From Macrostomum lignano (Eukaryota): 40,849 nt of DNA. This document shows positions 7,229 through 38,813 of the stretch, piece after piece. The notes beneath the pieces are model-generated. The model was not told the origin of the DNA and ran no database searches. It worked only from the letters and a program-made list of their open reading frames with translations. Made by a program: the position numbers and the translations under genes. The stretch's first letter is position 1; every line of letters begins with the position of its first letter. The stretch lies in the NCBI GenBank assembly GCA_002269645.1, contig NIVC01002486.1, forward strand, positions 1 through 40,849, read 5' to 3'.

Positions 7229-10152
<2,924 letters not shown>

Positions 10153-12318: not shown

Positions 12319-12541
<223 letters not shown>

Positions 12542-13424
12542 AAGACTTATTAATAAAGGATTTGCTATCTTTGAAAAGCGGTGGTTTTTTAAATTCCCTA
12601 GTCTGAGATGGATTAGAAGCATCAGGCTTTGGATTTTTAGAGAAGGAGAATTCCCTACTACCTAAGGACAGAAAAATCTCCTCACAGCCCACTCTCATCC
12701 CGTGTTCAAAGCTTTCATTAACTCCAGAACCAATCACGATCGGTTGGCATCAAATCCAGTTCAGTCGTTTCATTCTCTCAAATTTTGTTATTGAAAGCTT
12801 ATAACAGCTCGAGACGCAGGTCCTCCAGCGGCACGAAGCGGGTTTTTAGTCCAGAACTTCTCTTGAACTGGAGCTTGTCTCAACGTACTAACAGGTAAGT
12901 TTTGCTGATATATATTGAATGTTATAGAAAGATCAACAGAGCATATTAATACATGCTCTCAGACAGGCTGCATCATGAAATTCGCTCAGTTTTTCATAGC
13001 TGCAAAAAATTCGCGCTTTAGGCGGCAAATAAATCAAATTATTTGATATTATCCAAGCCAGCAGCTTGAGTTCCCTTGAGGCTTGGATGGAGCATGGATT
13101 AGCATAATGGATTCAGTTTAGTGCTTGCTAGATCGAACTGGTCGTAGTGACGCGGTCTCAAATTCGATAGATTAGAAAAACAAGAGCAAACATAAAAATG
13201 ATTTTTCCTATTAATCGGTGACGCACCGCGAGCCATACGGCATATGGCACATTGGCATATTTTACCGACTCTCTCATTAAATATGCACCCCACAGGATTA
13301 AGTTGTAAAATATAAGCTGCGAGTAAGTAAATCTAGCCACCATTTCCTTCTTAACAACAGCAACATCCACACGAAGGATTAACTACCGCGTGCACCTTGA
13401 GATATCGTTGACGCTAATTCAAGC

Positions 13425-14015
13425 ATGGTGCGTTATGGAACGGCTTTTGCTATGGCAGTCATTGCCGTTGTCTGCTTCTTGACGGTCGAGGCTCACGAAA
13501 GCAAGCGACGCTACAACTACCTGAGGGACGCCATGCTGAGCAAGCGAGGCTACAACTACCTGAGGGACGCCATGCTGAGCAAGAGAGGCTACAACTACCT
13601 GAGGGACGCCATGCTGAGCAAGAGAGGCTACAACTACCTGACGGACGCCATGCTGAGCAAGCGAGGCTACAACTACCTGAGGGATGCCATGCTGAGCAAG
13701 AGAGGCTACAACTACCTGACGGACGCCATGCTGAGCAAGCGAGGCTACAACTACCTGAGGGATGCCATGCTGAGCAAGAGAGGCTACAACTACCTGAGGG
13801 ACGCCATGCTGAGCAAGCGAGGCTACAACTACCTGAGGGACGCCATGCTGAGCAAGCGAGGCTACAACTACCTGAGGGACGCCATGCTGAGCAAGCGAGG
13901 TTACAACTACCTGAGGGACGCCATGCTGAGCAAGCGAGGTTACAACTACCTGAGGGACGCCATGCTGAGCAAGCGAGGCTACGAATACCTGCATAAAGCA
14001 ATGAGAGAAATCTAA
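13425..14015 (+). CDS. Multi-copy neuropeptide precursor, 196 aa: signal peptide, 12 KR-flanked 11-mers and a C-terminal GYEYLHKAMREI
   Basis: Signal-like MVRYGTAFAMAVIAVVCFLTVEA. Peptides: 9x GYNYLRDAMLS, 2x GYNYLTDAMLS and 1x RYNYLRDAMLS, all separated by KR. Most unit-to-unit differences are synonymous (CGA/AGA, GAC/GAT, GGC/GGT). AATAAA lies near 14079. Confidence 0.93.
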   Translation: MVRYGTAFAMAVIAVVCFLTVEAHESKRRYNYLRDAMLSKRGYNYLRDAMLSKRGYNYLRDAMLSKRGYNYLTDAMLSKRGYNYLRDAMLSKRGYNYLTDAMLSKRGYNYLRDAMLSKRGYNYLRDAMLSKRGYNYLRDAMLSKRGYNYLRDAMLSKRGYNYLRDAMLSKRGYNYLRDAMLSKRGYEYLHKAMREI

Positions 14016-14797
14016 ATCTGGCCAAAGTTCAATAAGTTTGGCTTGGCTTTGGCTTGATACCAATATATTGGCGGTATCAATAAATTTGATGAAACCTATA
14101 CGATATAAACTAAGATTTATCAAGAAACAGTTCTTGTATTTTTCGATTTAAAATTACACAATATGCAGCCACTATTTGCTCTGAATTTATAATTTTAATC
14201 TGATCAGAGGAATAACTAATGAGTTCGCGAGATCCCCTACGGCTGTCTCTGATATATATAATAAAATATTTATTAAAGCCGATAGGCCAAGCCTTGCAAT
14301 CCTTTGATTTTCACTCTGCTTTCTGTTTCTTATTAAGTTTTTCGGTAAGAAAGACGGATTCTGCAGTGCAGGGTAGCAGAGTTATTATCGATTGATTGAT
14401 CCACCATAAAATAACTGGCTTAGTGGGATGAAATTTGCAATGATTTTTGACGTAAATAAAGCTCATATTATAAGAACTGATTCTACTGTTCAAATTTTGG
14501 CTTGTACTTTTTAATGCAGATTTGTGTATAGTTAAGACTAAGCTATTTCGAAAAGATAGTATAGAGATGATTCACTTTTATGATATTTTATCACATCTAG
14601 CCGAAAAATCTCTTATATTTAGCAGGGAAGATCTCACAACCTATGGAAGATATTATCAAGCAAGGAAACTTCATATTTTCAGAAGCATTTTACATCTAAT
14701 ACGTTTATCAACAAATTCCTATATCCAACAGAGATCATAGCACAGAAGATCTGGATCTGGATACGGTGACCGCAAGAACAACAGGATACACTACATG

Positions 14798-15561
14798 GGG
14801 CCCATCACAAGCTCGAAAAATCACATCGTCGAAAAGCATCCACCATCACAAGCTCGAAAAGTCATAAGCTCGAAAAATCATATTGTCGAAAAGTTTAGCA
14901 ACCACCATCACAAGCTCGAAAAATCATAAGCTCGAAAAATCACATCGTCGAAAAGTTTAGCAACCACCATCACAAGCTCGAAAAGTCATAAGCTCGAAAA
15001 ATCATATCGTCGAAAAGTCCAGCAACCACCATCATTAGCTCGAAAATTCACAAGCTCGAAAAGTCACATCGTCGAAAAGGTTAGCAACCACCATCACAAG
15101 CTTGAATAGGGTTAGGGTTAGAGCTTGTGCCTTAGGGTTAGGGCTTAGGGTTAGGGTCGGGGTTAGAACTAGTGCCTTTAAGTTAGGGTTTAGGGTTAGG
15201 TTAGGGTTATGGTTCAGGGTTAGGCTAGGGTACTGGTGCCTTAGGGTTAGGGTTAGTGCCTTGGGGTTAGGGTTAGAGCTTGTGCCTTTTCAAGCTTGTG
15301 ATGGTGTTTGCTAAACTTTTCGACGATGTGATTTTTCGAGCTTATGACTTTTCGAGCTTGTGATGGTGGTTGCTAAATTTTTCGACGATGTGATTTTTCG
15401 AGCTTATGACTTTTCGAGCTTGTGATGGTGGTTGCTAAACTTCTCGACGTTATGATTTTTCGAGCTTATGACTTTTCGAGATTGTGATGGTGGTTGCTAA
15501 ATCAGTTTTCGACGATATGATTTTTCGAGCTTGTGATTTTTCGAGCTTATGATGGCGACCC
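14798..15561. mobile_element. Foldback/Mutator-like non-autonomous element: long, internally repetitive inverted arms around a telomere-like core
   Basis: Arms at 14798-~15104 and ~15291-15561 are reverse complements built from CATCACAAGCTCGAAAA subunits. Termini are GGG...CCC. An exact 9-bp TSD CACTACATG lies at 14789-14797 and 15562-15570. Confidence 0.88.
15105..15290 (+). repeat. Interstitial degenerate telomeric (TTAGGG)n tract
   Basis: About 11 exact TTAGGG copies plus variants (TCAGGG, CTAGGG, TTGGGG), punctuated by GTGCC-containing spacers. Confidence 0.9.
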
Positions 15562-16156: not shown

Positions 16157-19100
16157 ATGGAATTCACAAAAGAGTAAGTATAGCCGTCGATTTATTGAAC
16201 TTAACATGCACATTAGGGGATCTTGCTTTGCATCTGCACCTAAAATAAAATTTTTGAAACTATCGTACCCAGAAAAACCCTGAAAATAGATAAAATTTTC
16301 TACCTAGCAGGAAGTTTACTGAACCGCAGTTCCTCAAAAGCGTACAAGAAAAAGCGGGCAGACTTAAAGAAACTGCCTATTTAAACCAGCTTCCAAATTA
16401 TAAGCAATTAAGCGCAGTTATAAAAAAACAATGCATAAGCAGAAAATCAGAAAAAGCATTCAAGTCAAAACCAAAGCCAAGTGTCCACATTTTTGACGAT
16501 CAGTCGCGTCAAAAGTTTAGCCGAGAGTTCCGGGCCAGGTCAATAGTGCACAAAGCTTTTCCCCGCAGATTCGATCCCTACCAGGTGTTTAAAGTTGAGC
16601 AGCAGCCGTGCCAGGTGTTGCAGGTAACCGTTATAAAAGGTCGGAAGATCACCAAAGGTCGACTGTGGGATTTCAGTGAGTTGCGCGTGACCAAAACTTG
16701 ACAGAATCTGTACTACCTCATCTGATTGTAAAACCAAAAGTGAACTGTGCCTCCGCAGTTGACAAGCCGGATCCCTACGTGCAGCTGAAGATTCCCAGCA
16801 GTCCAACTGGAGTGAAGCGAACCAGCTGCATAGAGAACAACTCTGACCCCATGTGGAACGAGTCTTTCACCTTTCTGCTCGATGGAGCGAAGGAGAACGT
16901 GCTAAGTAAGTGAACTACATTTTTTATTGCACCTTCCCTAATGGGCAGATGTGCAACCGACAGCTCAGCTGCAGTAATCGCGCGGCCCATCTGAAGGCTG
17001 CGTACGGCTGTTCAGTCCAAGGACTAGGGGGGGGGGTCGCCACACACACTCAATTACCCCAGCTAATGCTGGCACCCATTTTACAGCTGGGTGAACTGAC
17101 GCAATGTAGAGTTGAGTGTCTTGCTCAAAAGACACAAATTGTTCCAGTGGAATCGGGAATCGAACCCCCTGAAATTTCAGTCGTGAGTCTGATGCTCTAA
17201 CCACTAGGCGAACTACATGTAATGCACTAATTCGAATATTCGACCAATATTCGAAAAAAACTGTCATGATAATATTTGTGCCAAAGAACCGGGACTACTA
17301 TACAACCGGTACTGATATTACTGCATCAACTATATTTTCTCTCAACTTCGTTTCAGTAATCTCTTTAATGGAAGCGAACCATTTGGGCTTGGATAGCCAA
17401 TATGGCGAAGTTTATTATCCACTAGGAGATCTTAAAATGGATCGAATGATTGCAAAAACATTCCATTTTGACAAGGTTAGTGTGTTGTAAACTGAAGGAT
17501 AAACTAGTACACTTGAAAGTTTCATGTAACTCGATAAATTTTAACCTACCGAACATTTTTTTTTCAGAAAGGACAAGTTGACATTGAATTTTACTTGAGC
17601 AACGAGTAAGTTTATTAGACCAGTAGCTATAGACCATTAAATTTTATCCCGAAATTACCGCCATCGTCAAAAGGCTTGCACTTCCACTTATCATACTGAG
17701 AACACTTTCACAACCGCGGTGTTTCTGACAGTCAAAATTTGTAAGACACCTATGATTTATTAAATATAGTTCTCAATAGCTGAGCAAGTTTACATTCAGT
17801 ATACTCAAGTCAACCACAAAGCTAATCATTTTACTTCAACTAACACATAGCTCGTTGGATTATACGATTACTGTCAAATCATCTACGAGAATAAGCCACT
17901 TCTAAACGTAAGCGCTTAAACATCTTAACAATTTACCGTAACCACCCAAACCAACCGAGAACAGCTGCAAGCCTGACCTCCGGTTCAGCCTGTGCCTATG
18001 CAACGAAGAGAAAGTGTTCCGCGAGCGTCGGCGCAAAGTCGTGTTCGAAGCGCTGCACGGACTGCTGCCCCGAGAAGCCGCTCCCGAAGCCTCGACGAGG
18101 TGCCCGTCATCGCCGTGATGGGCTCCGGTGGCGGCTTCCGAGCGATGGCCGCTTTTAGCGGAGTGTTCAACGCATTGGAGTCTAGCGGAGTGTTGGACTG
18201 CACAACCTACACTGCCGCTCTGTCAGGTAGGTTGCTAGAGAGCTACAGAGCTAGCTCAGATTATATCATATATCAATTGGTACTTGTTGTCCCGTATGTA
18301 GGTTATTTTTAATGAGTAGATCTGTAATTGCCAAACTTAACCAACTAATAGGGGTTTCACAAATCACAACGATCTTGATTCTTACGAGCAGAGAGATACA
18401 TTAAATGACAGCGCATATCGTTGAATGACAGTGCTAATTAGCTAGCGTCCTATTTGCCAATTTTTTTAGGAAAAACAGTTATAAAAGTACATCCTTGTTT
18501 TGTAGGTAGCAATGAACGAGATTTCGTTTGAATTTCTATTCAGAATTAAGTGCTAGACAATTTGGTGTCACGGAAAACGCTCAAAAACATGCGTTTAATG
18601 TGAAATGGAGAATAAAATATGAACATTCTAGATCTAGCCGTTTTCTTTGGATGCGACTTTTAGGAATTCGATTTCTTAGGAATTCTGAGACCACAGAGTT
18701 ATGGTTAATCAAGGTAAATATTTAAGTTGGTGGAAACAGCTTAAATTCATGTTTAGGGTAGACTACTATATAGAAAAGCGACTTCATGCTTTAAGTGAAG
18801 CGAAACTGCAATCATTTTAACAGTCACATGCATTAAGCTGTAGGCCAAAATCGATGCTCACAGTGAGCATGTTCAATGCTAAAATGGCTGAAGGAAGTAC
18901 ACTCGTTTACTATGAAATCGATTTACATGCCATTAACTGACACCCGCAGGCTCAGCCTGGTATCTGGCCACCCTGTATTCCCACCCGGAGTATCCCAGGA
19001 AGTCTTGCCGCATAGTGCAACAAGAAATCCGCTCTCGGGTTCAACAATCAATGCTGCGACTAGTGTCACCCAGCTACCTGTACAACTATGTGTGCCTCCT

Positions 19101-22100
19101 GGCCGAGAAAAAGCGACATGGCATACCGTTGTCATTCACCGACTTCTTCGGGTTGATGATTGGCCAGACGTTGATACCCGATGTAAGCAGTTGGATTCAG
19201 GCGCGTCGCCACCGGGGGACAGGGGAGACATGCCAACCCCCAGTAAAAGCTATGGGGGGACATGCCAATGCTTTGTTCCCCCAATCCACCTTGTTACCAA
19301 TAATCAATAATGTAATCAATAATTTTTCTTCAAGGCACCAAAATGAGTGCCTGCGGTGCCAAAATGAGTGCCTACGGCGCCAAAATGAGTGCCTACGGCG
19401 CCAAAATGAGTGCCTGCGGCGTCAAAATGAGTATCTGCGGCGCCAAAATGAGTGCCTGCGGCGTCAAAATGAGTGCCTGCGGCGTCAAAATGAGTATCTG
19501 CGGCGCCAAAATGAGTGCCTGCGGCGTCAAAATGAGTGTCTGCGGCGTCAAAATGAGTATTTGCGGCGCCAAAATGAGTGCCTGCGGCGTCAAAATGAGT
19601 GCCTGCCGCGTCAAAATGAGTGCCTGCGGCGTCAAAATGAGTGCCTGCGCGTCAAAATGAGTGCCTGCGGCGTCAAAATGAGTGCCTGCGGTACCAAAAT
19701 GAGTGCCTGCGGCGCCAAAATGAGTTCTGACAACACGATTCTTAAAATAATGTTAATGTAGGAATTTAGTCATGTATACATGAACATGTCCCCCCACGAA
19801 TAAAATCTATGGCGACGCACCTGGTTAGATTTAGTGATTTAATGTTAAAACCTTTACGACCTAATTTATGCGTCTTAAATATTCGCGAACAGCGGAAGAA
19901 AGCAGCATTTCTTATTGAAGGGACTTGGCTTGTCAAAGCGGAACACGAATTTAGCTATTGACGCGTATGGGCACCGTTAAGTGCATGAAACTGCATGAAA
20001 AAGGGTCCCTATGGTAATTATCTTAACATATTTGCAGCAAATACGAGGGGTGTTCGATATATTTCCCGATCCATAGAAAAGCAACAGTGTTTAATAAAAA
20101 ACAAATTTTAGCCCTTTCTGAAGTACTCTCCGTCTGCATCAGTGCACTTCCACATTCTCTCAAACCACATAGAAAAGCAGTTGCCCCACTCCGACTGTTC
20201 AGTTTATTGAACATTCCTCGTATAAACCTATCGAATTTAAAGTCACAAACAAAATATTTGTCAAGCTGTGCGTTGTCTGACAAAATGAATATACATTAAC
20301 TGAGAATGAGCTTCATTGTGCTGCAATACTAGTCACTCTGCCGATCATTTTATCGGAAAATTACTTAGTATCATACGCTCATATTAATTTCAGCGCATGT
20401 CCTGCAAACTGAGCGATCAATGTCAAAAAGTGAAGTACGCCAACCTTCCTTTGCCTCTCTATTGCTGTCTAAACGTTAAGAAAGACGTATCGGCGAGAAT
20501 ATTTCAAGAGTGGCTCGAGTTCACGCCGTTCGAAATTGGCTTGCCCAAGTACGGCTGCTTCCAACGAACCTGCCATTTCGGTTGCAAATTCTTCATCGGG
20601 CGGCTTTGCCGCGAATATGAAGAGCCACCGCTACACTTCTTAATGGGTAAAAGAGCTTAATGTTTGAAATCGTCTGTTTACATTTTGTTAATATTCGTAA
20701 TCGCAACGCCACATAATTTATCTTGCGCAGGTATTTGGGGCAGCGCGTTTACCATTCTGGTCAAGGATCTGCTCCGGCGCGAGATTGACTTGGAGAAGTT
20801 GTACAATGGCAACTACGAGGCTGAGCGATTCCGAGGCGAAGTTCCAAACGGGTTGGATGAAGCAGCTAAAAGACGGGGCAGCGGTAAGGCCCGGAGGACT
20901 AAAGGAATCGCAGCTTGACGAAGTCGGAGCAGTGTAGGATGAGGATAAGAAACATTGTTATGAAAAGCGTCGCTATAGAAAGTCATTGAACCAGATTGAA
21001 CCTGGCGTTCAACCAACTCGGAAGACTCACTAAGAACTCATACGATTTTCTGACATCTCATAAGGGAAGATGAAGTCGCCTCAGTCGCAACGCAGAGTTA
21101 AAGAAATGTCCTTAGAAATTTCCTGTCTAAGTCGTTCCGAGTCAGGAGAGCAATTAATCTATTTTTAGTTCACACTTTAGTCGTTATAAAGCCTCCGAAC
21201 GAGCCTCTTAACTATGCATCCACAATTCGGAAGTTCTTTCTGAATGATTTCAGCAAATTTTCTCGTGACAATGCTAACATATCGTGTTTTTGATGGGCTA
21301 ACTTTTTTTTTTAAATAAGCATCATATAAATATAAACGACTCTACGGAATGCCGTACGCGCTTGTCCAATAAATATGAACTGGGTTGACCCTAGTGATTT
21401 TTCCAATTTTCAGACTTGTCTGTTTCCTCGAACAACTCGGAGCCCCTGGGTCGTCGGCGGGCCGGCATGGCTGCGGCCAGTGGCGCTGACCCGCTGCATC
21501 CGCGACCAGTCAACAAAATTGACAAATTGCTACTGAATCTTGACGCCGAATGCAAAAACTTGCGCAGCTCCTACAACTTTGGCTCAAGCGGGATTGGCTC
21601 CATGAGCGCGCCAGTGAAGATGCAATCAAAAGGCGATAGTCTTTTTCAGTTTGTCAAGGGCGACCCGCCGTCAGAGGAGTACGGAACAATTGGTGAGCGC
21701 GTCTTGCTGTTGATCGTCGGTCTCTGGAAATAGAAACTCCTTCTGTCACTAATTTTTATTTCTTTGAATCTTTTGTACACAATTCACAGGAGACGACGAC
21801 GCCTCCTCAGTTGTGTCGCACGATTCCGACTCCGAAGAGGAACGAGGAATTTTGGAGAAGCTAGATCAACTGACTGCTGAGGACAATTCACCGCTAGGCT
21901 GGTGGGAACGATGGAGGAATAGCGTTTTCTCGGAGTGAGCCAGTACTTTGGTTGCAGAAAAAGATCTTTTGATTTCGATACATATTAATAGATACTGAAT
22001 CAAAGAAAATTATAAAATTTCAGATTGCGACTGCTCAACACCATGTCGGGCAGGGCAGCCATGGTGCACAACTTTATGCGCAGTCTTACTGTTACCAAGG

Positions 22101-24220
22101 CCTATCCTATAGCGCCATTCACTCCCACAAGACCTCGTGAAGCTGGATTTCGCTTTGAAGATGCACCGATTTCAGGTGAGCCAAACTGCGTTAGACTTTT
22201 ACTCACAGTGACCAAAATATTCATTCAAGTTTACGTTCCGCTTCCGCACGAGTTTACCGATTAAAGAAAGGTTGGTTTCCAAAAAGAAGCATTTCAGCTA
22301 CACTATGCTACTGTATGTGACTGTGTTGTTACTAGCAGTAATACCTTAAATTCCTTTATAAGTACGAGCCACCAATTATTTCACTATCTAACGATTGCAT
22401 TCTGTTTATTTACGAAGACAAATAGATCTCTAAAAAAGCTACACCTAAAATTTTTTGCAGTTGCCGGCAACGGTGATTTCCTAGAAATGTTTGAGACGGA
22501 CCAGAACTCCTTCTCCAAGTACATGCACGTAGTCGACGCTGGTCTGGCCTTCAATTCGCCCTACCCGCTAGTGCTGAGACAGCAGAGGGGCGTCGATCTC
22601 ATTTTGTCGTTTGACTTCAGCGGTAGAAAGCACGACAATTACCCGCCTTTTAAGGTGAGACAATAGTTTATTACGAGTTGTATTCATTAGTTACAAAGAT
22701 GATTGATACCCCTGCATACCTACCTATTATACTTTGGATAGCAGACGAACCATGCGATTTCGCCCCCGGATGTAACAAGTATTTGAATCGTCCGATTTAT
22801 TTGGTCAATGTGGTTATTTGCGCATTAGTATACAGTTAATTAAGTTATAGTTCGATACTTAAAACTTTGCCCTATAAACTCGTACAAAATAATCTTTTTC
22901 GTCACTTCAGGAGCTATTACTGGCGTACAAATGGGCCCTGATCAGAAATGTTCCATTTCCGCACATCACACTAGACAAATACGAGAAGAAAGGCATGCAG
23001 GAGGTTTACATCTTTCGAGACAAAGAGAATCCACGAGTGCCAATAATTATGCACTTCGTGCTGGTCAACTTATCATTCCGCGAGTTTAAAAACCCAAGTA
23101 ATAAGTTAATCCTAACTTTATAAATACCAATCACTACTTGATTCTACGGTTTGTCGATAGAAACAAGCTTAATTAAACTATTTCTTTTCCAGACGTTCGT
23201 CGGACTCTGCAAGACGAGCTAAACTTTGCAAACTTTGACATTTTTGGTGGAGAAAAGAATCCCTACAGTACATTCAACTTTGTCTACTCTCCGCTGGAAT
23301 TCGATCGCATCGCTTCCATGATGGAGTACAACACTCTTAACTGTCTGCCTCGCATCAAGAAGTGCATAGCCGAGTGCATCGAGCGTAGACGAAGCTTCGA
23401 TCTTGGAGTTCCCATCGACCAGTCGCACATGAACGACTTCCTTAACATGTCCGCCAATCTGGGCGTGAATCGCCACGACGCTAAAGTTCTTGGAAAGTAC
23501 ATAAGTCAAAGGGAGACAGAGTTCTCGCTTAACAGCTCGAGCGGAACCGGCGGCGGCGGACGCCACGCCAGACGCTGGGATTCAGACTTCGACGATCAAG
23601 ACGATGAAGATGAGGAAGAATTCGACGAAGAAATCACAACCCACGATGATGCGCAAGTTATTCAGCAGCGTAATGAAATTTCTCAAGGAAGCAATAGAGC
23701 TAAGCCCGATACCGGAAAAGAAAAAGTCAAGATTGTAGCATTCGACGAGCCAGATGGACCGCTGCAGCCACCGGAGTCGCTGCCGCATCAAGTATCGGCG
23801 ACAGCACCTACTCCTGCGCCCACACAATCTGTGAATTCGAACTCGGAAGCTTCATCTTTACGCCAGCGTAGAAAAGGTCAGCGCGGTCGCAACCAGCTAC
23901 GAGTGATCATACCGCAGCGGCCCTTCTTAGCACCAATACGACGCGACTGCCCCCGCTGTTCTGTGGCCTCGTCCTCATCATCGCCTTCATCAACATCTCC
24001 GATGGTTGGTTCGGCAAAGACTTCGCCACTTTTGCCTAAGGTTCGACAGCCGACACCGGTGAGAGTTGTTAAATCGGCGGTGACGTCGTCGTCTTCGTCT
24101 TCTGAGTTCGACACAGCAGATGAGGGGGGCGGTGGTCAACAAGCCAAGGACGAAGTTGATGCCGCCATTCGAGAACGTCTAAATGAAGATTTGCTACAGG
24201 AGCTGCAGAGATTTCATTAA
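16157..24220 (+). CDS. PLA2G4A: Cytosolic phospholipase A2 (group IVA-like): C2 domain, catalytic domain and a long C-terminal extension; ~15 coding exons; one apparent -1 frameshift near 18085
   Basis: Exons: 16157-16173 (tentative), 16569-16675, 16759-16905, 17357-17475, 17568-17606, ~17960/17972-18226, 18950-19182, 20394-20646, 20731-20883, 21414-21692, 21790-21934, 22024-22175, 22461-22654, 22911-23097, 23193-24220. Motifs: FDPYQ, DKPDPYV, PMWNESF, PDLRFS, GSGGGFRAM, ALSG|S (nucleophile), WLEFTPFEIG, G|IWGSAF, HVVDAGLAFNSPYP (catalytic Asp), GVDLILSFDFS. The acceptor of exon 6 is ambiguous. Confidence 0.95.
16921..17209 (-). mobile_element. tRNA-derived SINE with a CORE (MIR-like) domain, in cPLA2 intron 3
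   Basis: On the minus strand: A-box region CGCCTAGTGGTTAGAGC, B box GGTTCGATTCC, CORE-like TTGAGCAAGACACTCAAC...CAGCTGTAAAATGGG, and tail GCAATAAAAA. An exact 9-bp TSD GAACTACAT lies at 16912-16920 and 17210-17218. Confidence 0.85.
19198..19823. mobile_element. hAT-like MITE containing ~18 copies of a 21-bp repeat, in a cPLA2 intron
   Basis: TIRs are CAGGCGCGTCGCCA and TGGCGACGCACCTG. The 8-bp TSD is GTTGGATT / GTTAGATT (1 mismatch). The internal array (AAAATGAGTGCCTGCGGCG(C/T)C)n spans ~19335-19725. Confidence 0.82.
20044..20220 (-). mobile_element. 177-bp mariner-derived MITE/deletion derivative
   Basis: Ends are TA|CGAGGGGTGTTC and GAACATTCCTCG|TA. The minus strand encodes RMWKCTDADGEYF, resembling the mariner transposase C-terminal KCxxxxGxYF motif. 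Confidence 0.75.
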
Positions 24221-26773: not shown

Positions 26774-29570
26774 ATGAACTCGCAGGCGCAAAAGCAATCT
26801 GGAAGCAGGATTGCAGCGGCTGTTAAAAGTGGCGGAATCCGCTTCTGTCAGTCCAGCTCTCTTCGTGGCGTTGGTCGGCTTACAAAGACTGACAAGCCAC
26901 TGCTAATGGTAGTGTGGCTAGTATTTGTACTAACCATGCTAGCGTTTATGGTGGCCGCGGTGACTAGTCTGGTGCAGAGGTAGGCTTTGTACCTTTAAGC
27001 CTTCATTTTTCGTAATTATCACTTTATTGCAGCGATAATTGAGCCCCAGCAAAAGAATAATGTAATAAAGACGAATCTGCTTCTATAGTAGTAGAATTTG
27101 GATTCGATAATCACTAATAATTCCTGTACCCCATACATCAGATACCTGCGCTACGAAACCACCATAATGTCGACAATCCACACTAACTCACCGACCGAGT
27201 TTCCCAGCACAACACTGTGCCTGCTACATCCTTTTCCTGACAGAGTTCGGCAACTCTGGCAGAGCAAAATGTCCGAGTTTTCGCCAAGGAAGATGAATAA
27301 GTAACTAGCTATGGCTGTAGAAACATGCCATTTACTATTCGACTTTTTACTTTTCAAGCAGTGAAATTTATAATTTTAAGTAGACATCGCAATGCTACCG
27401 AAATCCTTTTTGCAATTGTAGTCGCTTAAGGCAGCAGGTCGACAAACTGATACAGGCCTCGGAGCTGTCAAAGGCGAGCGTTCTAAGCCACTACGACAAG
27501 CGCAGTATGTACTATCAAAGTCTGGACCCAGACATGGCCCTAGAGTTCGGATACCAGATGGACGAGGCACTGATGGCTATGATGACTGTGCAGGGAAACG
27601 TAGCTTGCATTGGGGTGAGCACTGAGCAATGAGCAGTAGTTTGCAAGATTCAGAGGAACATAAGAATTATCAATGATGCTCTTTAAATAGTGTATTAAAA
27701 GTACCTCCGATTTAGATACTCGCAAGTTAGACGTTAGAGTTCGTAGCGAACGTGTGGCTTTTGCGTTAGTAACAACTCACACCATTTACGATCCGATGTT
27801 TGTCCCGTGACTATCTCTCAATTCCATAAAGCAATACGACTGCGTTTCGAATCCGGTACAAAAGTGACAACCAGCACGTGGAGTCATCCAGACTATTTTA
27901 ACTGTTTTACTCTAAACATCGAGGGCGATTCAACCGGTGTGGACTCGTTAACCGTAGTGATTAGTATTGGCAAACAGCCGCAGCACACCGGGCCGCATAC
28001 AGCGTTTGTCCAGGATGTGTTTGAGCAGGCCTGGGGCGTCTTAGGCGCTGTCCACGAAGCCGGACAATACCCGAGTATAAAAAGGCACTCTGTGTATCTA
28101 CAGAATGGCAAGCTAAACGAGGTACGAGCGTATGCACCATTCCTCTGAGTTGTTAGTATTGCGTACATCATTTAATATTAACCTCATTTATATAAAAAAC
28201 AACTTTATATTAAAAAATCGGTCAATCACAGCTGAAATTCGAGGCAGTTCGGCACGAACTAACAGCCACACCGGTGCGTCCGTGCATCAATAACGCCGGA
28301 GAGCACAAGCGGGGTCGTCTGCGCGACCTTGATTTAGTAGTGGATTATAGTCACGAAAAATGCGTCGAATCGGCAGCGGCTAGGGTAATAGAAGAGCACT
28401 GCCGCTGCCTGCCAGCGTGGCTGATGAGGCGAGTGCGGCCAGGTCAGGTGCCCTACTGCGGAGACTTGCGGCAGGGTGTGGACAGTATATTTGAGCGACT
28501 TGATTGCTTGGGTGAGGAACACACTCATTGGGCTGAGGACCTTGTACGAAGCTACGGACTCAGGGGAACTATAAACTAACTTTAGCCCAGCAAATTCCGT
28601 TGAACAGGGACAACACATGAAGAGGCTAAAGAAAAATTCTTAGCAAAAGCGATTAAGAGTTAGTTTCGTATAATTAATTACGCACCTTAAGTGAAGTGCA
28701 TTTGAAATTGTTAGTTTGAAAATGTTTGACTTTGGATTTGAATGCTAGAAAATGGTTTATACCTGTTTCAATAAAATCTGTATGAGCCAATGAAACTAAT
28801 CAACAATAGCAAACCAGGCCCCAATAAGACTAGAAATAGGATTCTTTTCTATAAGATTTTTAAGTTTATTGCGTCTTCTGTGCCAAATTACAGAGCGAAT
28901 TATTCCAATGCTGGCGACAGATGCATCCTCGGCAAGCAGCCAGTGCCCCGAGCGTTGCAGCCGTATTGAATACCGAGCCGCGGTGTCGCAGACGGACTGG
29001 CTAGTTAGCCGCTGGCAAATGCTGCGTATGGTGCAACAGCATGCCTTGTGGAATAGAGTCTACCAACACATGGAGCGCATTAAGTTAAATAAGAATGCCA
29101 CAAACGCGAGTTCCACCATTAGAAGGCTAAAGAATTATTTCACTCGACGGGACATTGACAACCTGACTGATGTGTCCCCAGACGATGACACGCTAGGCCG
29201 CTGGGCTCAGCTGGCCGGAGAGCTGCAGGGTCACGGAGCAGGGTCCGGGAACAAGGACGAAAGCGGAGATCATCAATTTGTATTCTTGCGAGTTCGACGC
29301 ACCACAGGAGACGCCACGGAGACGCGCAAGGAGACATTGACTCTGAATTTCTATAGCCTTGTATGCCAGATTGGAGGTGTCTGCAGCATCACGCTGGGTC
29401 TCAGTTGCGCTTTTGTTGTAGAGCTGTTCGAGTGGCTGTACATTAGCGTCACAGGCAGTCAAGCAAGAAATAGAAAACCTGGTGAAGAGGCGCCACAGGC
29501 CGCTGCTATCACTACTGATGTCCCACCAGCTAGGAAGGATAAAGAAGCTAACGCCCCTGATGCTGTGTGA
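26774..29570 (+). CDS. DEG/ENaC (amiloride-sensitive sodium channel family) subunit
   Basis: Exons: 26774-26979, 27142-27300, 27422-~27620, ~27830-28122, 28232-28511, 28894-29570. The exon 3/4 junction is unresolved and an upstream exon is possible. Motifs: TM1 LLMVVWLVFVLTMLAFMVAAV, FPSTTLC, FNCFTLN, Cys-rich YSHEKC...EHCRC...YC...CPERC, and TM2 LVCQIGGVCSITLGLSCAFVVELFE. Confidence 0.88.
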
Positions 29571-34900: not shown

Positions 34901-37900
34901 TTAAGGATCCTAAATCATAAAGTCCTCAAGCTTGAACTCGAAATCCCAAAATTCCTAAATTTGGGATCCAAAAATCTCTGAAATCGAGATCCCAAAATCC
35001 CTGAAATCGAGATCCCAAAATCCCTGAATTCGGCATCCAAAAATTCCTAAAGTGAGATCCCGAAATACCTAAAATTCAAGATCCCAAAATCCCCAAATTC
35101 TAATTCCAAAAAGCTCTAAAGTCGAGATCCCAAAATCCCAAAAGCTGCTTACACAACGTTCTCCAAGCAAAACAAAACTCACATGCAGCTCATCCAATCA
35201 GCTGGCCACAGCGGCACCAATTGCTTCTCAGCAAACTCTTTAATCGCATCCTCCCGCTCGCTCTCTTTGATCCGCTGGCTGGCCAAAGCTTCCAGTTTAA
35301 TCCTGGCCGCCCGGTTCAACAGCTCCGTGGACTTCTGGCACCAGACGAAGTTTCGACGCGGTTGCGGGCCCGGCGGCTTGCCGGCAACCGACGGCGAAGG
35401 CGGCGGCCTGCCCTCAGCCGTCGCGGCAGCCGCGGCCGCGTCGTTCTGCTGTCGCCAAGCGTCTATTCGCTCCCTGTAGAGCCGAGTCTCCTTAGCGTGC
35501 CTGGCCAGCTGTTCAGGCATAGCCGATTGCACTAATTCGCGCAGTCGGGTTAGCAGCACTTGCAACTGGGACTCGCTGCGATTCTCGCGCAGTTTTAATA
35601 TTTTACGGCGCAGGCTAACCTTTGTGGCCAGGCCCAGGTGACCGGCCAGGTGGCTGTAGACTGCGTTGCATTGGGCCGAGGGCAGACCAGACCTGACGGG
35701 CGGGAGCGTTTAAATAGTAGTCAATGCTTAAGTAGCTGACACCTTTGAAGGGTAGCTGAAACTTTTTTTAATCTGACACTTTTGAGGTGTAGCTGACACT
35801 TTTGGAGGGTAGCTGACACTTTAGGAGTGTAGCTGACACTTTTGGGGTGTAGCTGACACTTCTGGAGTGTAGCTGACACTTTTGGAGGGTAGCTGACACT
35901 TTTGGGGTGTAGCTGACACTTCTGGAGTGTAGCTGATACTTTTGGAGTGTAGCTGACACTTTTGGTGTAGCTGACACTTCTGGAGAGTAGCTGACACTTA
36001 TGGAGAGTAGCTGACACTTTTGGAGGGTAGCTGACACTTTAGAGTATAGCTGACACTTTAGAGTATAGCCGACACTTTTGGAAGGTAGCTGAAACTTTTG
36101 GAGTGTAGCTGACACTTTTGGAGGGAGCTGACACTTTTGGAGTGTAGCTGACACTTTTGAAGTGTAGCTGACACTTTTAGAGTGTAGCTGACACTTTTGG
36201 AGGGTAGCTGACACTTAAGAGGTAGCTGACAGCCTGACAGGTTAGAGTGTAGCTGACACTTTTGGAGTCATGACCATAACGTTCAATCAATCATAACGGA
36301 TCAAAGCCTAACCGAAGAAAGTCGTCCAAGGCCAGCCAATCAGAAGCGAGGTCATTGCTAGCAAACAATTGCGACAATTTTCCACCGCCAGCATTGGCCG
36401 AAGCAGCAGACGAGGATTTCCTCTTAGCCTCCTTAATCCGATCGACAATCTGCAGAATTGGTGGCGGCAGATTTGGCGGCAGATTGGGCACCGCCTCATC
36501 GGGTTTAGCCTGGTTAGGCAGTTTGGACTGCTGCTGCTGCTGCTGAGCTGAACTTTTTCATTGCCCAACACTACGGAATCAAATATAGAGTCGAGAGACG
36601 GCTTCAACGGATTGACGTTGGCGGCTGGCTTAGCTGGAGACGGAGAGTCTGCCAGAACCCTGTCGATGATGTGATCGATAGATCGAATTGGTTGAGCAGG
36701 ATTCTGCGAGGCCGCCGCCTGTTGCTGAACAGTAGCTGGAGGTTTCAACGGAGTGACAGAACCTGTCATCTGAAGGTCAACAGCAGCCGTTGCGTTAGCC
36801 GCAGCTGTAGTAGTTTTCTGTCGCCTATGCGCTTTAGTCAAAGTTTTAACTGCTTTGGACACTAAGTCCCTTCGGCCGGGCGACATCTTCGACTTGGACT
36901 TGTTGGCGCCGCCGCCAAACAGCGAGGGTCGATCCGGAAGGAGCTGCTGCTGATGCTTGCGACGCTTCTTAGCAACACCCGCTGAGCTGTCCGCTGACGA
37001 GGACGAGGAAGCAGACGAGGAAGAAGATGATGAGGAAGAAGCAGAAGAATCTCGTCGGCGTTTCTTTGAAGCGGCATCGGCATCGGCGGCCGCGGGACGG
37101 GCGGCGCCGGATGGCGTGCTGCCGTCAGCACTAGCGGTCCTTCAATAACAATGTCTGACGCGTTGTCTGTAGTGACCTGCGATTGAAATAGGCTGCTCTT
37201 TAATCCCACACCCGATTCTCAATCTCACACCATTTATATTCTCAATCCCACACTCCAGATTCTCAATCCCACACCCCAGATTCTCAATCCCACACCATTT
37301 ATATTCTCAATCCCACACTCCAGATTCTCAATCCCACACCCAGATTCTCAATCCCACACCCAGATTCTCAATCCCACACTCCAGATTCTCAATCCCACAC
37401 CCCAGATTCTCAATCCCACACCCCAGATTCTCAATCCCACATTCCAGATTCTCAATCCCACACCCCAGATTCTCAATCCCACACCCCAGATTCTCAATCC
37501 CACATTCCAGATTCTCAATCCCACATTCCAGATTCTCAATCTCATACCTCTTAGATTCTCAATCCCACACCCCAGATTCTCAATCCCACACCCCAGATTC
37601 TCAATCCCACACCCCAGATTCTCAATCCCACACCCCAGATTCTCAATCCCACACCCCAGATTCTCAATCCCACATTCCAGATTCTCAATCTCATACCTCT
37701 TAGATTCTCAATTCCACACCCTACTTGTAGATTCTCAATCCCACGCCCCAGATTCTTAATCCCACACTCCAGATTCTCAATCCCACATCCAGATTCTCAA
37801 TCCCATACCCCAGATTCTCAATCCACACCCTAGATTCTCAATCCACACCCCAGATTCTCAATCCCACACACCAGATTCTCAATCCCACACCCCAGATTCT

Positions 37901-38813
37901 CAATCTCATACCTCTTAGATTCTCAATTCCACACCTTACTTGTAGATTCTTAATCCCACACCTTTCAGATTCTCAATCCCACACCCCAGATTCTCAATCC
38001 CACACCCCAGATTCTCAATCCCACACCCCAGATTCTCAATCCCACACCCTAGATTCTCAATCCCACACCCCATTCGCTAGCAATCAGCCCCTAGCATTCG
38101 CACCTCCAAGTCGCCCTGATTAATATAGAAGCCGCCGAGCTTGGGCTTCTGATTCGGCAGCACCATCAGTTCTCGAGCGTCGCCATCGTCAATGAAAGAA
38201 TCCTCAGAGTCGTAGCCCTCACCCGGGTCCATGTAGTCTTGGACGCAGATTCTTCGCTGCCTGCGACCGCCTTTGCTGACGTACACCTGGGGACCGTATC
38301 TGGACAATCGGAGGAAATTTAATACAGTGATTAATGATGAAAAGTAATAAGACTATTTTATGTTTCTTGCCTAGTGTTACTCTTTTGGATTTCTTACCTA
38401 GCCTCGAGACTCTGAGCAATTGACCGAAGTCTGTCATCCTCTGCGCTATCGACAGCAGCGAATGGATCAGCTGAGCCATTGTTATTACCATTGCTGCTGC
38501 CACCGCCGTTGTGCAGCGGCAAAGGTTCCGCCGGCTGACTGGGTTTAGTTGAAGCAGCCTTGCCGATAAGATCTAGGAATGAATATTCGTACCGTCTGTG
38601 CTCATCATCGTTGAGCTCGCCATCGGGAAACAGTTTGATTTCGACTCGATAGGCAAAATCTGATTTACTGTCGCTGGACTTGGGAAATTTGCTTTTGGAA
38701 GAAGCCGGCTGACATTTCTGCTGTTGCTGCTGCTGCTGCTGCGAGGACAACGCGGATGCTCCAGTTGTGGAAGCCAGGGTCTCAAAGTCCACGCGCCTCG
38801 GTCGAGCAGCCAT
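31990..38813 (-). CDS. UBN1: Ubinuclein (HIRA complex H3.3 chaperone subunit, Hpc2/UBN1/UBN2 family); 6 coding exons; three apparent -1 frameshifts
   Basis: Exons: 38813-38398, 38299-38104, 37176-36313, 35692-35183, 34178-34029, 33723-31990. HRD/HUN motif GYDSEDSFIDD...GGFYINQGDLE. Middle-domain motifs LPPNLPPPILQIVDRIKEA, AVYSHLAGH, AMPEQL, PRRNFVW and LVPLWPADWM. The C-terminus is Q/P-rich. UBN1 versus UBN2 cannot be resolved. Confidence 0.88.
32955..33600 (-). repeat. Coding 30-bp tandem repeat (QQPTP[S/P]QVSRP, ~20 copies) in the last ubinuclein exon
   Basis: Unit CCTCAGCAACCGACACCATCACAGGTCTCAAGG. The Q/P frame continues into the 31990-32925 ORF. Confidence 0.85.
34355..35140. repeat. 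Intronic minisatellite, ~22-bp degenerate unit (GAGATCCCAAAATCCCTGAAATC)
   Basis: Tandem units with higher-order duplication (~34680-34830 vs ~34850-35000). Confidence 0.92.
35730..36270. repeat. Intronic minisatellite, ~20-bp unit (GTAGCTGACACTTTTGGAGT)
   Basis: Direct tandem array. Confidence 0.96.
37200..38072. repeat. Intronic minisatellite, 21-bp unit (GATTCTCAATCCCACACCCCA)
   Basis: The array fills almost all of ubinuclein intron 2. Confidence 0.97.

What the first reader, a model, noticed from the sequence alone, without database searches (positions are those of the whole stretch)
13425..14015. Unrecognised multi-copy, non-amidated neuropeptide family (GYNYLRDAMLS x12)
This is a textbook prohormone layout: signal peptide followed by 12 KR-delimited 11-mers and a divergent terminal peptide, GYEYLHKAMREI. 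No unit has a C-terminal Gly, so the peptides would end in a free Ser-OH, unlike RFamide or LWamide types. The R-to-T variant recurs twice and removes a charge, while most other differences are synonymous, implying selection on peptide sequence plus recent unit duplication. I do not recognise the motif as a named family. The Tyr-rich N-terminus, internal Asp and hydrophobic C-terminus are only loosely reminiscent of pedal-peptide/orcokinin-type peptides.
Basis: partly seen in the sequence, partly recalled or inferred. Interest (0 to 1): 0.82.

Follow-up and report, generated by a model that had tools for sequence, protein, structure and literature searches.

The report
Orphan flatworm multi-copy secreted peptide precursor
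A small intron-less gene of the flatworm Macrostomum lignano encodes a signal peptide followed by twelve near-identical 11-residue peptides separated by Lys-Arg cleavage sites, so it looks like a species-restricted, non-amidated neuropeptide or secreted-peptide precursor that public databases hold only as a truncated 53-residue "hypothetical protein".

Summary
Window 13425-14015 (+) is a 196-aa ORF: a signal-peptide-like N-terminus, HES, twelve KR-preceded 11-mers (9 GYNYLRDAMLS, 2 GYNYLTDAMLS, 1 RYNYLRDAMLS after KRR) and KR-GYEYLHKAMREI-stop. No unit ends in Gly.

The organism is Macrostomum lignano. The same ORF lies on two Mlig_3_7 contigs. A third, about 95-97% identical locus has an intact 7-unit version. 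GenBank annotates that locus as a 53-aa hypothetical protein (PAA57452.1), which looks like a repeat-collapsed, transcript-derived model, so there is indirect evidence of transcription.

No relative was found in searches of 5.8 billion and 1.84 billion proteins, and no held paper contains the motif. The closest known analogues are the planarian pedal-peptide-like prohormones Smed-ppp-1 and Smed-ppp-2, which have the same architecture and were verified by mass spectrometry. The family's D-x-I-G-x-x-L-L core is absent here and sequence similarity is at noise level, so I do not file the gene in that family.

The best reading is a lineage-restricted, convertase-processed multi-copy peptide precursor, probably neuro- or endocrine. 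Neuronal expression, processing and function are untested. Evidence for selection is marginal: 4 synonymous and 3 non-synonymous variant types, P≈0.05. The "recurrent" R→T is one mutation copied by a 78-nt duplication. This is a new member of a textbook kind and of moderate interest.

The parts
13311..13316 (+). TATA-like hexamer (TATAAG), 109 nt upstream of the ATG. Candidate core promoter only.
   Evidence: Read directly from the sequence. The nearest upstream ATG is at 13283, before the TATA-like site, and an in-frame stop lies at 13398. Function was not tested.
13425..14015 (+). Complete single-exon CDS of 196 codons plus TAA, encoding the multi-copy peptide precursor.
   Evidence: The start context is aagcATGG, with A at -3 and G at +4. 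The identical protein is encoded on two M. lignano Mlig_3_7 contigs.
13425..13493 (+). Predicted signal peptide, MVRYGTAFAMAVIAVVCFLTVEA (aa 1-23). It has Arg3 in the n-region, an uncharged hydrophobic core and V-E-A at -3..-1.
   Evidence: It is the only one of 93 ATG ORFs in the window to pass a crude signal-peptide filter, with a hydrophobic core of mean Kyte-Doolittle 3.17 and a small residue at -1. SignalP was not available, so the cleavage site is inferred.
13494..13502 (+). Three-residue spacer, His-Glu-Ser, between the predicted signal cleavage site and the first dibasic site.
   Evidence: Translation.
13503..13970 (+). Twelve tandem 39-nt units, each Lys-Arg plus an 11-mer. Unit 1 is (KR)RYNYLRDAMLS. 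Units 2, 3, 5 and 7-12 are GYNYLRDAMLS. Units 4 and 6 are GYNYLTDAMLS.
   Evidence: GC3 is 0.90 in this frame, against 0.44 and 0.39 in the other two plus-strand frames and 0.57 pooled for other coding exons of the window. Units 4-5 and 6-7 are an identical 78-nt pair.
13971..14012 (+). Lys-Arg plus the divergent terminal peptide GYEYLHKAMREI. It keeps G1, Y2, Y4, L5, A8 and M9 of the repeat unit although 8 of the unit's 13 codons differ.
   Evidence: It is identical in the 7-unit paralogous locus L003.
14079..14084 (+). AATAAA, a candidate polyadenylation signal beginning 64 nt after the stop codon.
   Evidence: The plus strand has about one AATAAA per 1.5 kb, so this is weak support only.

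Best explanation
This is a real, lineage-restricted Macrostomum lignano gene for a secretory multi-copy peptide precursor of the prohormone type.

Proposed mechanism:
1. The 23-residue signal peptide takes the protein into the ER.
2. In the regulated secretory pathway a subtilisin-like prohormone convertase (PC2 or furin type) cuts after each Lys-Arg.
3. A carboxypeptidase E-type enzyme trims the basic residues.
4. One precursor releases about 12 copies of a non-amidated 11-mer: 9 GYNYLRDAMLS, 2 GYNYLTDAMLS and 1 RYNYLRDAMLS or YNYLRDAMLS. It also releases one 12-mer, GYEYLHKAMREI.
5. The peptides most likely act as a neuropeptide or peptide hormone on an unidentified receptor.

The array grows and shrinks by unequal exchange of 39-nt units: 12 units at this locus, 7 at a paralogous one.

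Shown: the ORF anatomy, the organism, the paralogues and the lack of homologues. Inferred: transcription, signal cleavage, dibasic processing, the neuro- or endocrine cell type and signalling.
For: Anatomy: ATG in a good Kozak context, an in-frame stop 27 nt upstream and no upstream ATG for 141 nt. There is a signal-peptide-like N-terminus that is unique among the 93 ATG ORFs of the window, and 13 KR sites in exact 13-residue register. A divergent last unit keeps the G-Y-x-Y-L-x-x-A-M core. AATAAA begins 64 nt after the stop. GC3 is 0.90 in the reading frame only.

Conservation: an intact 131-aa version with 7 units and identical signal and terminal peptides lies at a third locus whose flanks are about 95-97% identical. 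Across the two loci there are 4 synonymous and 3 non-synonymous variant types (P=0.048, dN/dS about 0.21).

Transcription (indirect): GenBank PAA57452.1 (BOX15_Mlig028694g1, 53 aa) equals signal peptide plus unit 1 plus terminal peptide, within a 396-nt gene span. The skipped 234 nt are exactly 6 units, and unit 1 contains no GT that could serve as a donor. Mlig_3_7 annotation was built only from RNA-seq-derived transcripts, novel ones below RPKM 0.5 being discarded (PMC5730564).

Processing machinery and precedent: M. lignano has a nervous-system-expressed PC2 homologue that is essential for development (PMC4490696). In the planarian Schmidtea, KR/KRR-delimited non-amidated 11-12-mers from small multi-copy precursors (ppp-1, ppp-2) were detected by mass spectrometry and fell after pc2 RNAi (PMC2953531 supplements).
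Against: There is no direct expression, localisation or peptidomic evidence.

No homologue outside M. lignano was found, so there is no phylogenetic conservation to lean on.

The units are 95-100% identical and sit in a satellite-rich region, and two minus-strand frames are also open. The non-repeat CDS (123 nt) shows 0 substitutions against L003, where only about 2 are expected, so that comparison has no power. The selection signal is marginal and could be inflated by C>T bias.

The unprocessed proprotein is basic (pI 10.1) with 15% Tyr, which would also suit a gland, eggshell or adhesive protein.

AlphaFold2 on the single sequence models each unit as a short helix in a repeat array (mean pLDDT 65, pTM 0.50).
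Confidence: 0.5

Rival explanations
1. The same convertase-processed multi-copy precursor, but made by an exocrine or reproductive gland rather than by neurons. The peptides would be released outside the animal or into the partner as a pheromone, seminal-fluid, defence or toxin-like peptide.
For: The architecture is shared with multi-copy exocrine peptide precursors such as yeast alpha-factor and insect apidaecin (my own knowledge). Restriction to one lineage and copy-number change between paralogues are typical of fast-evolving reproductive or defence genes. In planarians many prohormone genes are expressed in reproductive glands and the copulatory apparatus (PMC2953531).
Against: The main peptide has net charge of about 0 (pI 5.8), so it is not a cationic amphipathic antimicrobial type. 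The gene identifier was not found in the held supplements of the M. lignano seminal-fluid in situ screen or of the positional and comparative RNA-seq papers, though those files may be incomplete or use other identifiers.
Confidence: 0.2
2. A secreted but unprocessed basic, tyrosine-rich tandem-repeat protein with a structural or gland-product role (eggshell, cement, adhesive or mucus type). The KR pairs would then be part of the repeat rather than cleavage sites.
For: After signal cleavage the protein has pI 10.1 with 15% Tyr, 14.5% Arg and 8% Lys. Tyr- and Lys-rich basic repeat proteins are used in quinone-tanned flatworm eggshells and marine adhesives (my own knowledge). AlphaFold2 predicts a regular array of 11-residue helices with pTM 0.50.
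Against: Thirteen perfectly phased KR sites, each flanking a short hydrophobic-ended peptide, plus a KRR at the first site, match the pattern seen in MS-verified planarian prohormones. The protein is small, 173 aa once the signal is removed. The structure model has low confidence, and Foldseek against the PDB gives no match at E<=0.001, only generic helical repeats with TM 0.2-0.4.
Confidence: 0.12
3. A non-functional or proto-gene ORF. A 39-nt satellite in a repeat-rich region happens to be open and to follow a hydrophobic ATG-initiated stretch. It may be transcribed, but its product has no selected function.
For: The window has about 20 separate tandem arrays, many with periods divisible by three. 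Two minus-strand frames are also open across the array. No homologue exists outside the species. The selection test is only marginal.
Against: The combination of signal peptide and 13 phased KR sites is unique among the 93 ATG ORFs. The terminal unit has diverged at 8 of 13 codons yet keeps 6 of its first 9 residues. The ORF is intact at a paralogous locus despite a five-unit length difference and about 2-5% flank divergence. GC3 is 0.90 in the reading frame only. There is a transcript-derived gene model.
Confidence: 0.13
4. A highly divergent member of the pedal-peptide/orcokinin (PP/OK) family, that is, the M. lignano counterpart of planarian ppp-1 and ppp-2. This is a claim about homology and is compatible with the best explanation.
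For: The architecture is the same: a small precursor, 11-12-mer non-amidated peptides, KR/KRR spacing and a divergent last peptide. The 11-mer aligns in register with canonical cores as G-[LY]-[DN]-x-[IL]-x-x-[SA]-[LM]-L-x. Only 1.8% of shuffles of the peptide score as well. hhalign gives probability 71%. phmmer hits a PP/OK-like precursor, P0047, at E=1.6e-7. No canonical PP/OK precursor from M. lignano turned up in the profile search.
Against: The invariant D-x-I-G-x-x-L-L core is missing: Gly is replaced by Arg or Thr and Asp by Asn. BLASTP against ppp-1 finds nothing, and against ppp-2 gives E=0.44 out of register. The PP/OK profile search did not retrieve the M. lignano protein. A nonsensical register that spans the KR site scores higher (6.34) than the true register (5.48) in the same test. 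The phmmer and hhalign E-values are inflated by 13-residue periodicity, and many unrelated 13-mer-repeat proteins score far better.
Confidence: 0.12

Closest known systems
Schmidtea mediterranea pedal-peptide-like prohormones Smed-ppp-1 and Smed-ppp-2 (Collins et al. 2010, PMC2953531); PP/OK-type neuropeptides
   Same: Both are flatworm genes. Both encode a small precursor (96-154 aa there, 196 aa here) with an N-terminal signal peptide and 5-8 tandem 11-12-residue peptides delimited by KR or KRR. Neither has a C-terminal Gly, so the peptides are non-amidated. Both peptides have an aromatic residue near the N-terminus and L/M-L near the C-terminus, and both precursors end in a divergent last peptide. 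In the planarian, KR.RSFYDPIGGGLL.KRR was seen by mass spectrometry with the N-terminal Arg retained, which parallels KR-RYNYLRDAMLS here.
   Different: The defining D-x-I-G-x-x-L-L core is absent. There is no significant BLASTP similarity, and the PP/OK profile does not retrieve this protein. There are more copies here, and they are much more homogeneous. The planarian peptides are MS-verified and depend on PC2; nothing is verified here.
Orphan 'secreted peptide prohormone' (spp) genes of planarians, and lineage-specific neuropeptide-like precursors in general
   Same: Recognised only by signal peptide plus dibasic-flanked short peptides, with no orthologues outside a narrow clade.
   Different: The planarian spp genes were validated by mass spectrometry and in situ hybridisation. 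The peptide sequence here (GYNYLRDAMLS) matches none of them: a search of the paper's supplements found 'KRGY' only in spp-18 and spp-19 (GYHFFRL) and did not find 'AMLS' at all.
Multi-copy exocrine peptide precursors processed by Kex2 or furin-type enzymes (yeast alpha-factor, fungal KEPs, insect apidaecin)
   Same: A signal peptide followed by many identical short peptides separated by dibasic sites, with copy number that varies by unequal recombination (my own knowledge).
   Different: The taxa are unrelated and there is no sequence relation. Those precursors usually carry spacer dipeptides that need extra trimming. Here the KR pairs abut the peptides directly.
GenBank PAA57452.1 / UniProt A0A267E9S5 (hypothetical protein BOX15_Mlig028694g1, M. 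lignano)
   Same: It is the same gene family, annotated at the paralogous locus NIVC01002487.1. The signal peptide, first unit and terminal peptide are identical to those of the window protein (94% identity over residues 1-50).
   Different: The database entry is 53 aa because the model skips exactly six 39-nt units. The genomic ORF there is 131 aa with 7 units, and the window ORF is 196 aa with 12 units. The full-length proteins are not in the protein collection.

Membership tests
Prohormone / proneuropeptide-type multi-copy precursor (generic class) | N-terminal signal peptide | tested here: met
   MVRYGTAFAMAVIAVVCFLTVEA has a basic n-region, an uncharged hydrophobic core and V-x-A at -3/-1. 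It is the only one of 93 ATG ORFs in the window to pass a crude filter. No trained predictor such as SignalP was available.
Prohormone / proneuropeptide-type multi-copy precursor (generic class) | Repeated short peptides flanked by dibasic (KR/RR/KK) convertase sites | tested here: met
   There are 13 KR sites in strict 13-residue register, and the first is KRR.
Prohormone / proneuropeptide-type multi-copy precursor (generic class) | The gene is transcribed | tested here: inconclusive
   The evidence is indirect only. The transcript-derived GenBank model at the paralogous locus skips exactly 6 units. No reads or transcripts could be inspected, and the gene identifier was absent from the held supplements of five M. 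lignano expression papers.
Prohormone / proneuropeptide-type multi-copy precursor (generic class) | Expression in neurons or endocrine cells, and mature peptides detectable by mass spectrometry | not testable with these tools
   This needs in situ hybridisation or single-cell RNA-seq, plus peptidomics. The predicted monoisotopic [M+H]+ values are 1302.615, 1247.561, 1401.694 or 1245.593, and 1509.752.
Prohormone / proneuropeptide-type multi-copy precursor (generic class) | The processing enzyme is present in the organism | not tested
   From the literature only: an M. lignano PC2 homologue (RNA815_2403.2) is expressed in the nervous system and its RNAi is lethal (PMC4490696).
Pedal peptide / orcokinin (PP/OK) type | Multi-copy, non-amidated peptides of about 10-20 residues between dibasic sites | tested here: met
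Pedal peptide / orcokinin (PP/OK) type | Conserved core [FLYM]-D-x-[IVL]-G-x-x-[LM]-[LIV], which is invariant D, I, G, L, L in the ppp-1/ppp-2/P0047 alignment | tested here: not met
   The in-register peptide has N for D and R or T for G, and only the L/M-L end is shared. A nonsense register scores higher than the true one.
Pedal peptide / orcokinin (PP/OK) type | Significant sequence similarity to known precursors | tested here: not met
   BLASTP gives no hit against ppp-1 and E=0.44 out of register against ppp-2. The profile search retrieves 12 canonical precursors but not this protein. The hhalign probability of 71% and the phmmer hit to P0047 are driven by periodicity.
Amidated flatworm neuropeptides (FLP/RFamide, NPF, L/I/M-amides) | A C-terminal Gly before the basic site, as amide donor | tested here: not met
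   Every unit ends ...MLS-KR, and Gly follows rather than precedes KR.
Pfam families that hit the ORF (YqbF PF14553, DUF559 PF04480, zf-NOSIP and others) | At least one matched stretch that is significant on its own and covers the domain | tested here: not met
   YqbF scores 34 bits in total but no stretch passes on its own, and the best stretch is 10 residues. DUF559 is at its threshold and matches over the signal peptide. All are summed repeat noise.

The most novel reading that the evidence does not exclude
GYNYLRDAMLS defines a previously undescribed, non-amidated neuropeptide family restricted to Macrostomum or macrostomorph flatworms. It would be a young gene whose copy number is still changing between the sub-genomes of a neopolyploid (12 units against 7), and it would signal through a still-orphan receptor. 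In that case it would be a tractable example, in a transgenic and RNAi-amenable flatworm, of how a new peptide-receptor pair arises and expands in satellite-rich DNA.
Probability: 0.35. Interest if true: 0.55.

Novelty: new member of a known kind. Interest (0 to 1): 0.4.

Why it matters
If the peptides are real, M. lignano gains a new, abundant, easily synthesised signalling peptide. M. lignano is a transgenic, RNAi-amenable model for regeneration, stem cells and sexual selection. The peptide has no counterpart in planarians or parasitic flatworms, which makes it useful for receptor deorphanisation and for studying how lineage-specific neuropeptides originate.

The finding also exposes an annotation problem. 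Transcript-based annotation collapses tandem peptide repeats, giving a 53-aa model instead of 131 or 196 aa, and filtering against repeat annotation may remove such genes altogether. Multi-copy peptide precursors are therefore probably under-represented in this genome annotation and in others built the same way.

The mechanism itself is textbook, and orphan neuropeptide-like precursors are common in every newly mined invertebrate. The surprise to a specialist is modest.

Tried and rejected
1. Word-indexed homology search with the full ORF returned only two chance hits, P0001 and P0002. It even missed the true relative P0013, so it was insensitive for this repetitive query.
2. An exhaustive phmmer search of 1.84 billion representatives gave 97 hits. 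Inspection showed all but P0013 to be unrelated proteins with 13-residue periodic repeats (bacterial G-I-N-W repeats and others) or other KR-periodic neuropeptide precursors. I rejected them as homologues.
3. P0013 used as a query found only itself.
4. The Pfam hits are summed repeat noise.
5. A full-text search for 'YNYLRDAML' and for 'Mlig028694' found no papers. The supplements of five M. lignano expression papers contained no occurrence, and a sixth paper has no held supplements. McVeigh et al. 2009 (PMC2749192) is not held, and I did not try to retrieve Koziol et al. 2016. I therefore could not exclude that one of those two papers lists this precursor.
6. Comparing paralogues to measure selection failed. 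L001 and L002 are identical or nearly identical to the window around the gene. L003 differs by only 1-2% locally, so the 123-nt non-repeat CDS has no power.
7. PP/OK membership was tested by BLASTP, profile search, hhalign and a shuffle test and is not supported.
8. AlphaFold2 plus Foldseek gave a low-confidence helical repeat with no meaningful structural match, so there is no support for a folded repeat-protein family.
9. The bacterial promoter/terminator scan and Rfam were irrelevant or empty.

Full report
**Observation**

Window 13425-14015 (+) is an ATG-initiated ORF of 196 codons ending in TAA. Tandem Repeats Finder reports a 39-nt period at 13500-13991, with 12.6 copies, 95% matches and no indels. 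Cut into units, the product reads as follows:
- MVRYGTAFAMAVIAVVCFLTVEA, then HES.
- Twelve units of KR plus an 11-mer at 13503-13970.
- KR-GYEYLHKAMREI and the stop.

Unit 1 is RYNYLRDAMLS, preceded by KRR. Units 4 and 6 are GYNYLTDAMLS. The other nine are GYNYLRDAMLS. No unit has Gly before KR, so there is no amidation signal.

Units 4-5 and 6-7 are an identical 78-nt pair. The twice-seen R>T is thus one mutation copied by a two-unit duplication, not a recurrent change.

**Is it more than an open satellite?**

The window is full of tandem arrays, and two minus-strand frames are also open through this one. An open frame by itself proves nothing. Several other features do set this ORF apart:
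- Of 93 ATG ORFs of at least 50 aa in the window, only this one passes a crude signal-peptide filter, and only this one has 5 or more KR sites.
- The ATG has A at -3 and G at +4. An in-frame stop lies 27 nt upstream, and the nearest upstream ATG is 141 nt away, before a TATAAG at 13311-13316.
- AATAAA begins 64 nt after the stop.
- GC3 is 0.90 in the reading frame of the array, against 0.44 and 0.39 in the other frames and 0.57 in other coding exons of the window.
- The terminal unit has diverged in 8 of the unit's 13 codons yet keeps G1, Y2, Y4, L5, A8 and M9.

**Source and paralogues**

The exact 196-aa protein is encoded on two contigs of GCA_002269645.1. A related 53-aa protein found by exhaustive search (P0013) is GenBank PAA57452.1 / UniProt A0A267E9S5, 'hypothetical protein BOX15_Mlig028694g1 [Macrostomum lignano]'. 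The organism is therefore the free-living flatworm M. lignano.

L002 is the same locus as the window, 99.76% identical over 7.2 kb. L001 is identical across 12425-14800 apart from one single-base gap, and differs in the upstream satellites.

L003 (NIVC01002487.1) is a third locus with flanks about 95-97% identical. Its ORF is intact at 131 aa, with only 7 units and the same signal and terminal peptides. Its unit 1 reads RYNYPRDAMLS. Copy number therefore differs, 12 against 7, between duplicated loci of this neopolyploid genome.

**Indirect evidence of transcription**

The GenBank product at L003 is 53 aa, but the gene spans 396 nt. The missing 234 nt are exactly six 39-nt units. The junction must fall inside unit 1, which contains no GT. 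That is what a repeat-collapsed transcript aligned back to the genome would produce, not a real intron.

Wudarski et al. 2017 state that the GenBank annotation of Mlig_3_7 derives solely from StringTie/TACO and de novo transcript assemblies, with TransDecoder ORFs. They discarded novel transcripts below RPKM 0.5 and excluded transcripts overlapping repeat annotation (PMC5730564). This implies RNA evidence for the family. It may also explain why the 12-unit locus has no protein entry.

I could not inspect any reads. The gene identifier was not found in the held supplements of five M. lignano expression papers, so the expressing tissue is unknown.

**Selection**

Across the window and L003 there are seven distinct unit variants:
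- Four are synonymous: CGA/AGA, GGC/GGT, TAC/TAT and GAC/GAT.
- Three are non-synonymous: G>R in unit 1 at both loci, R>T, and L>P.

With 8.67 synonymous and 30.33 non-synonymous sites, the binomial P is 0.048 and dN/dS is about 0.21. Three of the four synonymous changes are C>T. The 123-nt non-repeat CDS shows no substitution against L003, where only about two are expected.

**Homology**

The word-indexed search with the full ORF gave only noise. The exhaustive phmmer search of 1.84 billion representatives gave 97 hits. Apart from P0013, they are unrelated proteins with 13-residue periodic repeats or other KR-periodic precursors. P0013 used as a query finds only itself among 5.8 billion clusters. 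The Pfam hits are summed repeat noise. No held paper contains the motif. The family is an orphan as far as these resources can see.

**Closest known system**

The supplements of Collins et al. 2010 give the planarian pedal-peptide-like prohormones Smed-ppp-1 and Smed-ppp-2. These are small precursors with KR/KRR-delimited, non-amidated 11-12-mers such as GAYYDPIGGGLL and SYFDKIGSDLL. The peptides were detected by mass spectrometry, including forms that retain an N-terminal Arg after KR-R, and they fell after pc2 RNAi. The architecture is the same as here.

Membership fails, however:
- The ppp-1/ppp-2/P0047 alignment has an invariant D-x-I-G-x-x-L-L core that the M. lignano peptide lacks.
- BLASTP finds nothing against ppp-1, and E=0.44 out of register against ppp-2.
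- A PP/OK profile retrieves 12 canonical precursors but not this protein, and none from M. lignano.
- hhalign gives 71% probability on a periodicity-driven alignment.
- In a shuffle test the true register scores 5.48, reached by 1.8% of shuffles, but a nonsense register spanning the KR site scores 6.34.

The gene works like a PP/OK-type precursor but cannot be filed as one.

**Mechanism**

The most likely course is co-translational signal cleavage after Ala23, then convertase cleavage after each KR, then carboxypeptidase trimming. This would release about 12 copies of a neutral, non-amidated 11-mer and one 12-mer, which would then act as signalling peptides. M. lignano has a nervous-system-expressed PC2 homologue whose knock-down is lethal (PMC4490696). 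Every step after translation is inferred.

**Rivals**

- An exocrine or reproductive-gland origin for the same processed peptides.
- An unprocessed basic, Tyr-rich repeat protein. The proprotein has pI 10.1 and 15% Tyr, and AlphaFold2 models a helical array at pLDDT 65 and pTM 0.50. Foldseek finds no PDB match at E<=0.001.
- A transcribed but functionless satellite ORF.

**Verdict**

This is a real and well-described feature, and most likely a lineage-restricted multi-copy secreted peptide precursor. It is a new peptide family of a textbook kind, under-annotated in public databases, with expression, processing and function still to be shown.

Noticed in passing
L003:3001-3396 (NIVC01002487.1), paralogue of window 13425-14015: GenBank model PAA57452.1 (53 aa) skips exactly six 39-nt repeat units by a non-canonical 'intron'. 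The genomic ORF is 131 aa. Transcript-based annotation seems to collapse tandem peptide repeats, and the 12-unit loci have no protein entry at all.
   Followed up: yes
window 14802-15555: A large palindrome lies about 0.8 kb downstream of the gene. Two arrays of a 62-nt unit in inverted orientation (arms up to 226 nt, 92% complementary) flank a core of degenerate TTAGGG/TAGGGT telomere-like repeats (15107-15276). The Mlig_3_7 contig behind L002 ends just past this structure, at about window 15617. The contig behind L001 also ends about 2.3 kb after the gene, but where that falls in the window was not mapped.
   Followed up: partly
window 16698-22666 (+): Exons of a cytosolic phospholipase A2-like gene (a C2 domain, then PLA2_B catalytic-domain pieces) start about 2.7 kb downstream on the same strand. 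The gene called at the same relative position in L003 is 1104 aa with C2 and PLA2_B. Whether the peptide gene shares a trans-spliced transcriptional unit with it is unknown.
   Followed up: partly
window 28869-29570 (+): An exon encodes the C-terminal part of a DEG/ENaC (amiloride-sensitive sodium channel, PF00858) protein, about 15 kb from the peptide gene. The score is 23.1 bits, just under the Pfam gathering cut-off of 23.6. Some members of this channel family are peptide-gated in other invertebrates. The proximity is probably coincidental.
   Followed up: no
window 35179-35565 (-) and 36308-38813 (-): There is an exon for the ubinuclein conserved middle domain (PF14075, E=3.9e-16). Neighbouring minus-strand ORFs are probably from the same gene.
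   Followed up: no
window 8987-9134 and 19339-19725: The same 21-nt satellite (unit GCCTGCGGCG..AAAATGAGT) occurs twice, once upstream of the peptide gene and once inside the cPLA2-like gene region. About a fifth of the window is tandem arrays (periods 4-93 nt).
   Followed up: no
P0047, P0100-P0105 (database proteins, not in the window): The PP/OK profile search turned up several unannotated multi-copy x-L-D-x-I-G-S-x-L-L precursors from metagenomic and Logan assemblies, plus a Pomacea canaliculata 'hypothetical protein'. These look like unannotated pedal-peptide-type prohormones.
   Followed up: no
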